From assembly GCF_000315625.1 (NCBI RefSeq), contig NW_005434670.1, positions 330,237 to 394,236 of the forward strand: a DNA stretch of 64,000 nt, given 5' to 3'. Every line of letters starts with the position of its first letter. The first letter of the stretch is position 1. The position numbers were made by a program, and so were the translations under genes. The notes under the pieces were generated by a model. The model did no database searches. It had not been told where the DNA came from and saw only the letters and a list, made by a program, of their open reading frames with translations. The stretch is from Guillardia theta CCMP2712 (lineage: Eukaryota > Protista > Cryptophyta). Positions 33,134 through 38,628 of this stretch are shown here, one piece after another.

Positions 33134-34269
33134 AGTTCTGGTTCTTTGATCTCTCCTGACATCTTGACACCAACAACACATGACAAGGCTATCGTGCTGA
33201 CCCCCACTGCAGCAGCTGCTGCTCGCTCCCGCTCATTATGCACACGTCGCTGGTATACCGAGTCTTCATTCTCAATCCAGTTGCCTGTGATATCAGCTCA
33301 GCATAACAGTCTCAATTCATTGTTTGCCCCATCTCCCAACTCCATAGCCAGCTCTGGCCATGCAAAACAATCTTGGCAAGACAGTCCTACATGCTTTGTT
33401 CTCGACCAGCGTCAAGAAAATTCATTGCATTCCCCAATCTCATTAGGTCTTCTTCTTCTGGTACTGGTACTGCAAGGCTCTCTCTCACTGCCGCTATGCC
33501 CTGATTCATCTCCTGTCAATCATCGACTCTCCTGACTATGATCGACCCAAAGAGACTCTCATTCGATACAGATTCTGCCTACATCCAGGTTCTTATACAC
33601 ATCCCTAGCGCTATCCACATCATGGATCGTCAACCTGGATTCAGTGTCTGCGCGCCATAACATCTCTATGAGATAATGCCAATCCATGATCTTTGTCCCC
33701 TGACGCCTTCCCATGTCTCCTATGTCCTCTCAAGCACATTCTGACTTCAAGGGACCTTTTCAAGTTTGTTCATTTTCCTCTCTCTCCCTCTCTCCCTCTT
33801 GCCCCCCCCCCCCCCCCTCCCTCTCCCTCTCCCTCTCCCTCCCTCCCCCTCTCGCCCTTTCTCTCCTCCTCGTTCCCATCCCCAGAGTTGCCGGACCCAC
33901 CTAGTACTCTTGCAATATACTTGACTAAAAAACAGCCGGTAGAAGTCACGTGATCACCATTCGGTAACTACCCTCCCCGTACTTTGACTACCCCTTCATA
34001 TAACTATGAATTGACTATGAATCACCCCTGCGAGACACCACCCCTACCCCAGTATTCTGTCAGTTGCGCCCTTGTCGTTGTGACCTTCCTCATAAGTAAC
34101 GAGGATAGTCACTGAGTGCCGCACGGCAATGAAGAAAGGCCCGGGGCCCGGGGCCCGGGGCCCGGGGCCCGGTTGACCAGCCCCGGCGTTTTCAAAATTT
34201 CGTGATTGAATATCCGGCGAAACTCATTTAATCTTGTTCACCCGTTTCCGCGGCGGCAGCAACGGTGAA

Positions 34270-36793
34270 ATGGCGGAAGGTAGGGAGGATGATGTTCCGC
34301 TGCGGCTGCTGCGCGCGAAGGAGCATGAGAGCTCAGCGTCTTCACAGAAGAAGATGCGAAAGAAGAACTTCAACACTGAAAAGATCTACATGTATAAGAT
34401 CCAGAAGGTTGCCAGGTTTTTCAGCGAGCGATCGAAATCCGACGGCGATGCTGAATTCGCCTCTGCATTGGATGAGAAGGGACAGCTGAAATTGCCGCTC
34501 TCTTGGCCGTGCATCCAGGCTTTGTTCGATCATCTCGCAGAGGGTAGGTCGCATCCTCGGAAAAAAAGGAAAAAGGGAGATTCGAATGTGGAAGCGAGCG
34601 AGGGCAAAGACGATGAGGTAGGGGAGGATGGTGAATCGCTTCAGAGCATATCCGTAGCGACCTTACAAGGATACAAGAAAGCACTTAAATTTTATTATAG
34701 AGAGCAAAATGTTCCTTTCACAGCAAGAGGACTCGAGGATTCCAACAAGACTCTGGATGCAAGCATTGATGGTATCCTTGAAGAACATGGGTTGCTAGAG
34801 TACAAAGCGGATCGCAGATCAAAATCCAAACTAATGAAGAGTTCGTTGAGCTCACACAGATATATAGAACTTTGCAAGAAGATTATTACATTGGGATCCG
34901 AAGAGAGGGGTGCAGAGCTTGGGTCGAACGGGCTGTTCGGGCATGTGGCAGCAACTTTGATGTGGAATTGTTGTTGCAGCAGCAGTTGTCTTGACGGCCT
35001 CAATCTCGACCATTTCGACTGGGTTGGAGATTCTCTCAAGCTGACCATCATCGAGCCGGTTGATGAAGGTCATGAGGAAAGCTCAAATTCAAATCCAGGA
35101 GCTGTGACCACAAGGACTGTCAGTGTGTTTGCCACTCCGTTTAGCCCGGAAACTTGTCCCATTTTGGCGCTTGCCCTATACGCCTTCACCCACCACAGAT
35201 ACTGGGAAGGTAACAACTTCTTCCTCGGCTCCGAACAGAAGCAGAGGTTCGGATTCATCGTTCAGGGAACCATTCCGCAGGCAGAGCTGCAAGCGGACGA
35301 GTGGCGGGAGCTAGGTGAGAGAAGCCATCTTATTCGCTGAAGAGTGACGATGTGGTTACTTCAAGGTGCTAACCTTCTCAAGAAAAGCGCGGTGAGCTTC
35401 CTGTTCAGATCAAAGGGAGGACCTCCTTCCCAAGACATTAACCGCAGGGCGAATTGGACCGGGGAAGCACCCTCAGTGGATAACCAGTCGGCGGCGACCC
35501 CATCGCCCGATGGCGATCAGCTTTGTGGAAGAATCCTCGCTGGAATGGATATGAAATCTCCTGACTTTGACGTCCTGTCTCCACATTTCACTCTGAAAGG
35601 CTACGAGGAGATCGAGAGTGTCGGTTTCGAACGCTTCATGGTGGGCTATCATACGTGTCCCGATAGTTTCAAACGGTGTATCCCGGTCTTCCTCGCCAAC
35701 ATCATCTTCCACTTAAAAACCTTGCAATCATGGTTTCCAGCACAACATCCTGTATGGAAAGCTCCAGTTTTCGGTGTGTTCGGCACAAGCACCCTCCCGA
35801 AGCTCGCAGACTTTCAGAGAGAAGTTGTCCTCTGTCATGGCATGTGCTCTGACTGCGGTGTGAAAGCGACTGGCGTTCCTCGTGATCATGCTGCGAATGT
35901 TCGGGCCAAGAGAGATATCAAGATGCCTATCAAGAAGTCTTCAGGTGTACAGGATCTGAAGTCGGTGATTGGCGACGAGGTAGCGAAGCTTCGAATCGGA
36001 CTGCATGAGGACATCTTGCGTACGTTGAACTCGAGGATTGAAAAGTTGAATCCGGAGGGCTCCAATCGCGACGAGATTGACAGCTTCAAGAAGGCGATCA
36101 CGGATGATCTGGTTGCGACTGTCAATGCTCGATGCGACAACCTTGCCGGGTCCGTCCAGGCGTTCAGTGAGGCCAAGTACCAGCTGGACACTGAAGAGAA
36201 GAATTCAGGAGTGCACGAGCTCTTCATTAGCAACTCTTTTGCCGGTGACCTCTTCCTGTGGAACGGATCGTATCATATCATCCCTCAAAAGTTCAGATTC
36301 CCGTCCAACGTCAACTGCAAGGCCTTGTGGGAGAGGTGGCACCTGGGTCAGGACATCGTCGTCGACGGAGTTTCTCGCCGGCTCGGTCCCCTCAAGCGCC
36401 TGGCAGATCCGCAGTACTCCAAGGAACTGAGAAACATCAAGATGAAGGGGATAGTGTCAAAAGCGTGTCAGGTAATGAACCTTGTGGAGGAGACGGCGAG
36501 GAGTCTGGGTCTTGTGAAGCAAGGGGAGCCCATCTCGGAGAGCAACTTCCTTTACAGCTTCGACCCGGCCTTCGAAGAGGTCGTCAAGCGCCACTATGGC
36601 ACTGAAGCTGTCAGCAATCTGCCACGATACAAGAAACTGTCGTATAGGAAAGTGTTTGATAAGCTGGACGGCGCGTCAGACCTCAAGGATGACAGGTGAG
36701 CGGGTCTGCTCGTTCTGATGATGTTTGATTCCAACTTGCAGTGAAAATGACAGCTCCAACGATCCCGACATGGATGCGCAGAACGACGACTAG
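34270..36793 (+). CDS. Crypton-type tyrosine-recombinase-derived protein, apparently catalytically dead (2 introns)
   Basis: ORFs 34234 and 35344 are joined in frame by a 51 nt GT-AG intron (35315-35365). Crypton-like motifs TLQGYKKALK, LMWN, DHFDWVGDSLK, VFATPFSPETCPILALALY, GGPP...RANW, GDQLCGRILAG, PHF and C-terminal FRFP...LWERWHLG. NLS PRKKRKK. Confidence 0.8.
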
Positions 36794-37100
36794 ACGATAA
36801 GCCAAGCCGGGCAAACGTGAACACGACCGTATGATGAATTGACTAGTATCGCTTTAAGTGTATAATTGAACTTCTCTATATATGCATCCGAAAGACCGGC
36901 GGGCCCGGGGCTCTTTCAGTTCTCTCAGTCACCGTCAGTTACAGTAGACTGAGGCTGTCCAACCCGGGGACTGGCTACCGCCGCGGGGCCCGGCGGGCGC
37001 CATCCGATCATTGACGGAATCGTGGGAGTCCGACTCCTGGCTGCTGCAGTTTGTGCTGATGAATCTGAGGCGGGCTGTTAAAAGGGGGTGTAAACTGGCA

Positions 37101-38628
37101 ATGGCGTCGTGTCGGGGAGCGACATGGCTGGTCCTAGCGGCGATGATGTTGACAGCAGAAGTTGCGAGCGCCTTCAGATGTCCATCACTTGCGCTGGGAA
37201 GAGCAGGAGCGAGGGGAGGAGCACGGGCTTGTTCTTCGTGGAGAGCAGGTAAGTGATGTCGATGCCTGTCAAGATTTTCGTGACGGTGACGAGAAGGGTT
37301 TGTTGACAGACTTCAAAGTGTTCTTTGATGTTGTAGTGGACGAGAAACCAGCTGGGCGCATGACTTTCAAGGTTTTCCACTGCCTTGCGCTGTCGCCATC
37401 CCAACGTGACGCTGTTTGCTTGTTCAGGTGTCGCAAGACTTCTTGCCCAAGTGAGGTGCTGCCTATCGTCGAGCTTGACACTGAAGGACGTACAGGACAA
37501 CTGAGAACTTCCGAGCACTTATGAGTGGAGAAAAGAGGTGAGCGATGAAAGTGAGAGAAGCTTCAATGATGGTATTGTTCAGGATCATCGACCCTCTGCT
37601 TTCCTATCAGAACTGCCAGTTTGAGTATGGCCCGCAGTATGTGGAAGGGACGGGCAACTACAAGGTCCGCTCAACGACAGGGGAGGAGGAAGAAAGGAGC
37701 ATGACGGGAAGTGCAGTGGTCGCATGTCTGCAAAGGAAGGGAAAGAACGTCTTCGGGAAGGAGAAGATCGCCGAGCCCCAGGACCTCGTCACCTGCCGTC
37801 ACAAATGCCCTGGCCCTGTCGACCTCCTCCTCCTCGTTGCCGCCTGTGACTCGTGGATTGGGGCAGGGCGGGGGATACTATTATGGCATGGAAGTAGATC
37901 TTGTCAACGCTGATGCACCTGATGAGGAAGACGATGCTGGTGCGGATGAGACGCGAGGAAGCTTGCGAGGACGATATCTTGTATCTTTGAAATATGGCAG
38001 CGCCAGCACACATGTAGAGGAACTCAAAGTCACAAAAGAGCAGCAGGCTTACACAGAAAGGCAGATAGCAAGACAGCTGAGTGAAGACGTCGGAGGAGGA
38101 AGTTGGAGAAGAAACAGAAAGTAGGATTTGTGGGGAAGGAAGAGTGCTAGGGGGCAGTTGAGGAGGAGGCCCTGAAGGAGGCTCACATGAGGCTGGCAGG
38201 GCGCAATCTCATCTCAACACAACTGCAGAAGCCTCTCGGTCTCATCCTTGAGGAGGAGCCGAGCGGTCAAGGAGTGTTCGTCGCTGAGGTAGCTGTCGGA
38301 CAGACTGCCCTCCTCCTGCTGACTTGCTGCTTTCCAGGTTTCTCCCGGCAGCAATGCGGAGAGGAGCGGAAACATCTTGCCGGGGGACTCGGTTGTGAGG
38401 GTCGGGGAGGAGGACTGCTCAGCTGCGACTCTTGAAGACGTGCTCAACCTCATCGGCAATGCCAAAAGTTTCGTTTCCGTCACATTCTGCCGGTATTTCG
38501 AGCCCCGTGTCCTCTGCCTCCTCGTCCTCCTCGTCCTCCTCGTCCTCCTCTTCCATCTCTACCTTTTGCATCTTGGCCCTCATGATGCTACAACTGCAGG
38601 TCTGAACCGTCGATGGCGAGTGACGTGA
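37101..38628 (+). CDS. Plastid-targeted protein with a divergent cyclophilin-like N-terminal region and a C-terminal PDZ domain (multi-exon)
   Basis: Leader ...TAEVASA-FRCPS. KVFFDVVVDEKPAGRMTF...TTENFRALMSGEK...LSYQNCQF resembles the cyclophilin N-terminus. KPLGLILEE...GVFVAEV...PGSNAERSGNILPGDSVVRVG...LEDVLNLI is a PDZ domain. Confidence 0.65.

What the first reader, a model, noticed from the sequence alone, without database searches (positions are those of the whole stretch)
34270..36793. Catalytically dead Crypton tyrosine recombinase retained as an intact gene (candidate domestication)
Seen: ~800 aa uninterrupted spliced frame, NLS, host-type short introns and no obvious element ends. 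By-eye comparison with Crypton motifs: the catalytic Arg position (WNLxxR) reads WNCCCS. The Lys loop (KxDQxG) is replaced. HSxRKG reads NLLKKS. The Tyr expected before GDQxxGR is absent (TPSPDGDQLCGR). Structural motifs and the C-terminal FP...LWxxW domain persist. Established: Crypton domestication produced yeast Ndc10/Cbf2 and Gcr1/Msn1/Hot1, and animal ZMYM/KCTD1/QRICH1. Inference: an independent domestication giving a DNA-binding, chromatin or element-regulating protein.
Basis: partly seen in the sequence, partly recalled or inferred. Interest (0 to 1): 0.75.

Follow-up and report, generated by a model that had tools for sequence, protein, structure and literature searches.

The report
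Dead Crypton recombinase kept as gene
A single-copy gene of the alga Guillardia theta descends from a Crypton jumping-gene enzyme, has lost five of the six residues needed to cut DNA, and is still conserved, expressed and under strong selection, so the alga has most likely reused it as a DNA-binding protein, a known kind of event that has not been described in this group of algae.

Summary
Window 34270-36793 (+) encodes an 808-aa, three-exon gene with GT-AG introns of 51 and 46 nt. It belongs to a very large Pfam-less family (5633 cluster representatives). An AlphaFold model of a paralogue matches Flp, Ndc10 and Cre (Z 13-16). About 20 paralogous loci lie in this 87-Mb genome, including a 3.4-kb element with 99-100% identical copies that keeps R-K-H-R-W-Y. 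The window copy reads S / replaced loop / N / K / W / no Tyr, so only the Trp survives. It keeps 21 of 24 conserved columns after the Tyr but only 13 of 30 before it. It is single copy at DNA level and has no element ends. Hanusia phi has a full-length 808-aa orthologue (88-91% identical) with the same dead site and the same two exon junctions. A metagenome contig carries a 97.8% identical genomic orthologue, giving dN/dS 0.08 (39 synonymous and 12 non-synonymous changes, p 7e-17). So this is a domesticated Crypton recombinase. DNA binding without cleavage is an inference. The public model GUITHDRAFT_160772 (641 aa) probably skips 167 coding residues. Other agents of this scan reported sibling cases elsewhere in this genome. 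It is a new member of a known kind.

The parts
34270..35314 (+). Exon 1 (348 codons plus the first base of a split Gly codon). It holds the N-terminal SAM-like/core-binding domain, an acidic linker, and the first half of the recombinase catalytic domain.
   Evidence: Open frame. 100% identical to residues 1-348 of the public model P0179 and 91% identical to Hanusia P0178. Weak Phage_int_SAM_4 hit at residues 25-54, at the same place as in paralogues.
35315..35365 (+). Intron 1: 51 nt, GT..AG, phase 1, with an in-frame TGA.
   Evidence: Sequence. Removing it gives exact colinearity with the intronless paralogue on contig 76 and with P0178 and P0001. The same position and phase are found in the element copies C342 and C93 and in C64. 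GT/AG are kept in L041.
35366..36695 (+). Exon 2 (443 codons). It holds the second half of the catalytic domain, the post-Tyr helical domain, a Cys/His-rich strand region, a helical hairpin and the C-terminal domain.
   Evidence: Open frame. AlphaFold model with pLDDT 82.7. 88% identical to P0178. 12 of the 13 differences from L041 in 35366-35862 fall on third codon positions.
36696..36741 (+). Intron 2: 46 nt, GT..AG, phase 2.
   Evidence: Sequence. The junction KDD|S is matched by P0178 and by the public model P0179. GT/AG are kept in L041.
36742..36793 (+). Exon 3: a 16-residue acidic tail plus the TAG stop.
   Evidence: Translation. The same tail is present in P0179, and a similar one in P0178.
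34555..34578 (+). Basic cluster PRKKRKKG, a likely nuclear localisation signal. A second cluster, KKMRKKN, lies at 34348-34368.
   Evidence: Coordinates. Equivalent basic patches are present in all paralogues. The NLS function is inferred, not tested.
34978..34980 (+). Box I catalytic Arg replaced by Ser (motif WNCCCS, 34963-34980).
   Evidence: This column is Arg in 100% of 133 family representatives. The same Ser is found in L041 and Hanusia.
35059..35100 (+). The beta-hairpin that carries the catalytic Lys (family motif K.DQ.G) is replaced by an acidic/Ser-rich loop.
   Evidence: The Lys column is 99% conserved, and the Asp and Gly columns 93-95%. All three are lost here.
35368..35388 (+). 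Box II: the family motif HS.RKG reads NL.KKS (His to Asn, Arg to Lys).
   Evidence: The His and Arg columns are 99% conserved.
35455..35457 (+). The Trp of the family AGWSLG motif is retained. It is the only catalytic-set residue kept.
   Evidence: The column is W in 122 of 148 filled rows, and the window has W. Its equivalence to Cre W315 rests on spacing recalled from memory.
35482..35532 (+). Site of the missing nucleophile Tyr (family motif DRYI), followed by the conserved GDQ..GR motif.
   Evidence: The Tyr column is 100% conserved in 147 representatives, and the window has Ser or no equivalent residue.
35881..36177 (+). Long helical hairpin (about residues 172-270 of exon 2). It is the least conserved part.
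   Evidence: AlphaFold secondary structure. VIA-align matches only generic helical hairpins. 72-82% identity to Hanusia here, against 94-100% in the C-terminal domain.
36244..36348 (+). Core of the conserved C-terminal domain (W.G..H..P..F.FP......LW..W..G). This stretch is 100% identical to the Hanusia orthologue.
   Evidence: The fold was not identified.

Best explanation
This is a host gene made from a Crypton-type transposon's tyrosine recombinase (a domestication, or exaptation). Shown: it descends from a cryptophyte clade of Crypton-like elements that is still mobile in the same genome. It has lost the catalytic Arg, Lys, His, second Arg and the nucleophile Tyr. It is single copy without element ends. 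Its orthologues in a close relative and in the genus Hanusia share the dead site. It evolves under strong purifying selection. Inferred: the protein is nuclear. It uses the retained two-lobed recombinase clamp (N-terminal SAM-like domain plus catalytic-domain scaffold), the well-conserved post-Tyr domain and the C-terminal domain to bind DNA without cutting or rejoining it, as yeast Ndc10 and the animal DUF3504 proteins do. The helical hairpin may mediate oligomerisation. Its target DNA and cellular role are unknown.
For: Family and fold. The AlphaFold model of paralogue P0001 (pLDDT 84, pTM 0.83) matches Flp (Z 16.1), the Ndc10 DNA-binding domain (Z 15.0) and Cre (Z 13.4 over 275 residues). 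All 50 top rows are tyrosine recombinases or Ndc10. The window exons match P0001 at E 1e-64 and 1e-75.

Active relatives. A 3.4-kb single-gene element has copies that are 99.3-100% identical and an intact catalytic set.

Loss of the active site. R, K, H, R and Y are 99-100% conserved in about 145 representatives. The window reads S, replaced loop, N, K and no Tyr. The erosion is local: 13 of 30 conserved columns are kept up to the Tyr, against 21 of 24 after it.

Single copy. The nearest paralogue is at most 42% identical, and the 6-kb locus is unique at DNA level.

Selection. Against the genomic orthologue L041 (97.8% nt identity, introns and splice sites kept) there are 39 synonymous and 12 non-synonymous differences: dS 0.078, dN 0.0064, dN/dS 0.08, Fisher p 7e-17. 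39 of 52 coding differences are at third codon positions (p 1e-9). An element copy pair (C43/C93) gives 0.44.

Orthologue and expression. Hanusia phi protein P0178 is 808 aa, 88-91% identical, has the same dead residues and has both exon junctions as predicted.

Tree. The window plus L041 sits inside the cryptophyte clade on a long stem of 1.48 changes per site, against 0.5-0.7 for its neighbours.
Against: No direct evidence of DNA binding or of any function. That the Hanusia protein comes from a transcriptome is recalled from memory. Synteny beyond about 100-140 bp of flank could not be tested, because L041 is only 2.8 kb and no Hanusia genome was available. The fold was modelled on a paralogue and on exon 2 alone, not on the whole protein. 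The C-terminal domain has no identified fold. The tree was a quick search, and the sister relation of the window gene to the Hanusia/multicopy clade has only 85% support.
Confidence: 0.85

Rival explanations
1. It is a transposon-derived regulator of the Cryptons that are still active in the same genome. A dead recombinase that still recognises Crypton ends, or that forms mixed oligomers with active recombinase, would repress or steer their transposition. This rival concerns the function. It accepts the domestication.
For: Active, nearly identical relatives coexist in the genome. The DNA-binding lobes and the oligomerisation-type helical hairpin are retained while the chemistry is lost. Several other members of the same subfamily have also lost Arg and Tyr: contig 76, contig 93 and Hanusia P0180.
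Against: No evidence of binding to element ends. The window protein is only 33-40% identical to the active element's protein, so shared site specificity or mixed oligomers are not assured. Its branch is long.
Confidence: 0.15
2. It is a decaying or non-autonomous transposon relic whose open frame is intact by chance, evolving neutrally.
For: It belongs to a transposon family, and other degenerate copies exist in the genome.
Against: dN/dS is 0.08 with p 7e-17. The 808-codon frame is intact in three organisms. The locus is single copy without ends. Conserved non-catalytic columns are retained.
Confidence: 0.02
3. It is still an active recombinase or nuclease that uses non-canonical residues.
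For: The fold and the Trp are retained, and a Lys replaces the second Arg.
Against: The nucleophile Tyr, both Arg, the His and the hairpin Lys are all gone, and the Lys loop is replaced. No family member among about 145 lacks the Tyr and Arg I while being multicopy.
Confidence: 0.03

Closest known systems
Ndc10/Cbf2 of budding yeasts (a Crypton-derived kinetochore DNA-binding protein)
   Same: Tyrosine-recombinase fold without a working catalytic site, kept as a host DNA-binding protein. Ndc10 structures are among the best structural matches of the family model: 3sqi Z 15.0, 6p7x Z 14.7, 4aco Z 13.9. Its derivation from Cryptons is stated in PMC3212892.
   Different: No detectable sequence similarity beyond one NDC10_II hit at E 0.086 in 63 relatives. 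Different eukaryotic supergroup and a separate origin inside a cryptophyte element clade. No evidence of a centromere role.
DUF3504 genes of animals (KCTD1, KIAA1958, ZMYM2/3/4, QRICH1, WOC), which are domesticated CryptonA recombinases
   Same: Crypton recombinase domain conserved as a host gene after loss of most of R-H-R-Y (PMC3212892). Here too the Tyr and both Arg are lost, with purifying selection and expression.
   Different: No DUF3504 Pfam match. The whole element protein is kept as a stand-alone gene rather than one domain fused to host domains. The known range is narrow (Guillardia and Hanusia).
Crypton transposons (CryptonS/CryptonF type; Goodwin 2003; Kojima and Jurka 2011, PMC3212892)
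   Same: The parent family here is a roughly 3.4-kb element that encodes only a tyrosine recombinase with a conserved C-terminal region. It has no long terminal repeats, is low in copy number and carries an intron. Relatives occur in stramenopile algae.
   Different: The window gene is immobile, single copy and catalytically dead. Assignment to a named Crypton group was not possible without Repbase sequences. The TATGG termini typical of CryptonS were not seen at the ends of the local element.
Flp recombinase of the yeast 2-micron plasmid
   Same: Best structural match of the family model: Z 16.1, 246 residues, model range 25-498.
   Different: Flp is active and has the full catalytic set. Sequence identity is only 7-8%.

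Membership tests
Tyrosine recombinase superfamily (fold) | Two-lobed fold: an N-terminal core-binding/SAM-like domain plus a C-terminal catalytic domain like Cre, Flp or lambda Int | tested here: met
   The model of paralogue P0001 matches Flp at Z 16.1, Cre at Z 13.4 (275 residues) and XerH at Z 12.6. The window exons are homologous to P0001 over their full length (E 1e-64 and 1e-75). This was tested on the paralogue, not on the window protein itself. The exon 2 model is confident (pLDDT 82.7).
Tyrosine recombinase superfamily (enzyme) | Catalytic residues R-K-H-R-(W/H)-Y | tested here: not met
   The window reads S, replaced loop, N, K, W and no Tyr. The same holds in L041 and Hanusia P0178.
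Crypton transposon (mobile element) | More than one copy, definable element ends or short terminal direct repeats, and an intact recombinase | tested here: not met
   Single copy, no flanking repeats, dead active site. Paralogous loci in the genome do meet this feature: a 3.4-kb element with 99-100% identical copies.
Crypton-derived (domesticated) host gene | Descent from element recombinases (nested among element copies in a tree) | tested here: met
   The window gene sits inside a cryptophyte clade (99% support) together with the multicopy elements. This was a quick tree on the exon 2 part only.
Crypton-derived (domesticated) host gene | Orthologues in other taxa with the frame kept, and purifying selection | tested here: met
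   L041 gives dN/dS 0.08, p 7e-17. Hanusia phi P0178 is 808 aa and 88-91% identical.
Crypton-derived (domesticated) host gene | Expression and correct splicing | tested here: inconclusive
   The Hanusia protein shows both junctions spliced as predicted. That this record is transcriptome-derived is recalled from memory. No G. theta transcript data were available. The public G. theta model uses a different acceptor for intron 1.
Crypton-derived (domesticated) host gene | Conserved genomic position (synteny) | not testable with these tools
   L041 covers only 143 bp upstream and about 90 bp downstream. These flanks do align. No Hanusia genome was available.
GCR1_C DNA-binding domain (PF12550) | Match to the Pfam model in the C-terminal region | tested here: not met
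   No hit at E up to 1 in the window exons, and none at E up to 0.1 in 63 relatives. There is only an Atlas feature lead at 0.87 to a cluster in which 20% of members carry GCR1_C.
DUF3504 | Match to the Pfam model | tested here: not met
   No hit.

The most novel reading that the evidence does not exclude
The window gene and its sibling catalytically degenerate paralogues form a host-kept set of Crypton-derived DNA-binding proteins. The siblings are GUITHDRAFT_113076 on contig 64, the intronless gene on contig 76, and the second Hanusia protein P0180. On this reading they recognise Crypton ends or related repeats and control the Cryptons that are still active in the same genome, acting as transposon-derived repressors, or they have taken over a chromosomal role such as centromere or repeat binding, as Ndc10 did.
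Probability: 0.15. Interest if true: 0.7.

Novelty: new member of a known kind. Interest (0 to 1): 0.45.

Why it matters
Crypton recombinases are known to have been domesticated in yeasts (Ndc10, Gcr1) and in animals (DUF3504 genes). This would be a well-supported case in cryptophyte algae, a distant branch of eukaryotes. Unusually, the parent transposon family is still mobile in the same genome, so the parent enzyme and its dead descendant can be compared directly. The work also corrects a public gene model (641 aa to 808 aa). It points to a very large recombinase family (thousands of clusters) that has no Pfam model.

Tried and rejected
These attempts gave nothing useful:
- Pfam on both exons and on paralogues gave only sub-threshold Phage_int_SAM_4 hits.
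- PDB sequence searches with each exon and with a 17-row family profile found nothing relevant.
- Foldseek and VIA-align on the exon 2 model gave no clear match.
- The Atlas search on the C-terminal 158 residues gave only leads below 0.9, including one GCR1_C-bearing cluster.
- A search for terminal direct or inverted repeats around the gene found only chance-level short matches.
- A paper search for the metagenome project PRJEB17505 found nothing, so the organism behind L041 is unknown.
- A paper search for Crypton plus Guillardia found no report of these elements or genes.
- One call failed on reversed coordinates and one on a size limit. Both were corrected and repeated.

Readings rejected:
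- A neutral relic is rejected by dN/dS 0.08.
- 'Host-type introns' as evidence of domestication is rejected, because the element copies carry the same intron.

Exons were searched by reference. The full-length comparators were natural database proteins (P0178, P0001) and the intronless open frame L008:1333-3885:-.

Full report
**1. What is in the sequence.**
- An ATG at 34270 opens a frame that is interrupted once by a TGA at 35338 and ends near 36699.
- A GT..AG intron of 51 nt (35315-35365) removes the TGA in frame.
- A second GT..AG intron of 46 nt (36696-36741) joins a short acidic tail that ends at TAG 36793.
- The product has 808 residues.
- I never built or searched the joined protein. 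Exons were used by reference (window:34270-35313:+ and window:35368-36693:+). Full-length comparisons used natural database proteins and an intronless paralogous open frame.

**2. Which genome and how many copies.**
- The assembly has 87.1 Mb in 669 contigs, and the window is contig 4:330237-394236.
- The public protein that matches exon 1 at 100% is GUITHDRAFT_160772 of Guillardia theta CCMP2712, on a contig of 1,275,965 bases. That is the length of contig 4.
- Six-frame searches of the genome with each exon find the locus itself and some 20 or more paralogous loci. None is more than 42% identical.
- The 6-kb locus has no other DNA match in the genome apart from low-complexity words.
- No direct or inverted repeats bracket the gene.

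**3. The family.**
- Pfam, PDB sequence search and a family profile against the PDB recognise nothing, apart from weak N-terminal Phage_int_SAM hits. The best is 4e-6 among 63 relatives.
- A profile search of 1.84 billion representatives finds 5633 clusters at E up to 1e-3 and 1243 at E up to 1e-30.
- Most lie on metagenome contigs of about 3-3.5 kb. Some come from chrysophytes and from Hanusia phi.
- An AlphaFold model of the paralogue P0001 (GUITHDRAFT_113076, contig 64), built with 148 relatives, is confident: pLDDT 84, pTM 0.83.
- Foldseek gives Cre first (probability 1.0, TM 0.64 on the target), then XerH, Ndc10 and Flp.
- VIA-align gives Flp Z 16.1, Ndc10 DNA-binding domain Z 15.0, Xer Z 13.7 and Cre Z 13.4 over 275 residues. 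All 50 rows are tyrosine recombinases or Ndc10.
- Five columns are 99-100% conserved in the family: Arg (WNL..R), Lys (K.DQ.G), His and Arg (HS.RKG) and Tyr (DRYI). A Trp nine residues before the Tyr is present in about 82%.
- Their spacing (27, 82, 3, 34) is close to that of Cre. The Cre numbering is from memory.

**4. Active relatives in the same genome.**
- The paralogues fall into two groups.
- Group B, to which the window gene belongs, includes an element of about 3.4 kb whose copies on contigs 43, 342, 1, 53 and 4 (at 207 kb) are 99.3-100% identical.
- That element has a single two-exon gene with the full catalytic set.
- Its ends are definable, and it has no long terminal repeats.
- This matches the definition of a Crypton (PMC3212892).
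- Intron 1 has the same position and phase in the window gene, in contig 64, and in the element copies C342 and C93. It is absent from the contig 76 paralogue.

**5. The dead site.**
- The window protein has Ser for the first Arg.
- An acidic, Ser-rich loop replaces the Lys hairpin.
- Asn and Lys stand in for His and the second Arg.
- There is no Tyr. Only the Trp is kept.
- Of 54 columns conserved at 85% or more in the family, the window protein keeps 34, against 50 for the active element.
- The losses are concentrated before and at the Tyr: 13 of 30 are kept there, against 21 of 24 after it.

**6. Orthologues, selection and expression.**
- A word search with exon 2 found a 449-aa protein on a 2806-bp ENA metagenome contig, L041.
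- L041 aligns to window 34127-36881 at 97.8% identity. It has both introns, their GT/AG sites and no stop.
- Nei-Gojobori counts over the three exons, with split codons skipped, give 39 synonymous and 12 non-synonymous differences: dS 0.078, dN 0.0064, dN/dS 0.08, Fisher p 7e-17.
- 39 of 52 coding differences are at third codon positions, p 1e-9.
- For contrast, the element pair C43/C93 gives 0.44.
- The 90% clusters of the two L041 products also hold P0178, an 808-aa Hanusia phi protein from EukProt, and P0179, the 641-aa public G. theta model.
- P0178 is 91% identical over exon 1 and 88% over exon 2. It carries the same dead residues, and its sequence runs across both predicted junctions exactly.
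- The C-terminal domain is 100% identical over 50 residues. The helical hairpin is the least conserved part, at 72%.
- The loss of catalysis therefore predates the Guillardia-Hanusia split, and the protein has been kept since.

**7. The public gene model.**
- P0179 uses the same donor for intron 1 but a distant acceptor, and so leaves out 167 residues.
- In that stretch (35366-35862), 12 of the 13 differences from L041 are at third codon positions, p 2e-5. The Hanusia protein contains it.
- The 808-aa form is therefore the better model.

**8. Tree.**
- On the exon 2 part (65 rows, quick IQ-TREE search) all G. theta and Hanusia sequences form one clade with 99% support.
- Within it, the window gene plus L041 groups with Hanusia P0005 and the multicopy element (85% support).
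- Contig 64 and contig 76 pair with each other (97% support).
- The stem of the window gene is 1.48 changes per site, against 0.5-0.7 for its neighbours. This fits a burst of change after the loss of catalysis, followed by the present constraint.

**9. What it most likely does.**
- Shown: descent from a Crypton recombinase, loss of the active site, single copy, conservation and purifying selection.
- Inferred: nuclear localisation through the two basic clusters. DNA binding without cleavage through the retained recombinase clamp and the conserved post-Tyr and C-terminal domains. Possible oligomerisation through the helical hairpin.
- The fold of the C-terminal domain could not be named.
- GCR1_C is not supported by Pfam and is only a weak Atlas lead.

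**10. Novelty.**
- Domestication of Crypton recombinases is established for yeasts and animals (PMC3212892).
- The paper library holds no report for cryptophytes.
- Other agents of this scan reported similar dead Crypton genes on other pieces of this genome. I confirmed in passing the degenerate sets of the contig 76 and contig 64 genes.
- This is a new member of a known kind.

Noticed in passing
window 35314-35865: The public model GUITHDRAFT_160772 (XP_005840989.1, 641 aa) joins exon 1 to a distant acceptor and omits 167 residues. The Hanusia orthologue has these residues, and they evolve as coding sequence: 12 of 13 differences from L041 are at third codon positions. The 808-aa form is the better model.
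   Followed up: yes
L008:1333-3885 (G000 contig 76, minus strand): An intronless 851-aa open frame of the same subfamily has Arg to Leu, His to Ser and Tyr to Cys. It lacks the intron that the element copies and the window gene share. It is possibly a second domesticated gene, and possibly a processed copy.
   Followed up: partly
G000 contig 64:166086-168374 (P0001, GUITHDRAFT_113076): A single-copy annotated paralogue (794 aa) has only the box II His changed (to Gln). Its status, active or domesticated, is open.
   Followed up: partly
P0180 (Hanusia phi, 832 aa): A second Hanusia protein of the same subfamily, about 40% identical to the contig 64 and contig 76 genes, has also lost Arg (to Ser), His (to Asn) and Tyr (to Cys). 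Tyr to Cys recurs in contig 76, contig 93 and this protein.
   Followed up: partly
L042:5523-8912 and its copies in L043-L046: A 3.4-kb Crypton-like element has 99.3-100% identical copies on five contigs. Its left end reads ...ACTAAACAGACC and its right end ...AAAAAATTGATTA(G)A. It has a short subterminal inverted match (CTAAACAG / CTGTTTTAG) and a possible TAGAA repeat at both junctions of one copy.
   Followed up: partly
window 34138-34172: A (GGGGCCC)n microsatellite lies about 100 bp upstream of the start codon. It is one 7-bp unit shorter in the metagenome orthologue L041. The rest of the 143-bp upstream flank differs at only one base.
   Followed up: no
window 33770-33890: A long C/CT-rich low-complexity tract (poly-C plus CTCCCT repeats) lies upstream of the gene.
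   Followed up: no
window 37103-37600 (+): The next gene downstream starts about 300 bp after the stop codon. By eye it looks like a cyclophilin-type prolyl isomerase with a signal-like N-terminus. This was not tested.
   Followed up: no
family-wide: This recombinase family has 5633 cluster representatives at E up to 1e-3 in the 1.84-billion-protein library but no Pfam model. Most members sit on metagenome contigs of about 3-3.5 kb, which is about the size of one element.
   Followed up: partly
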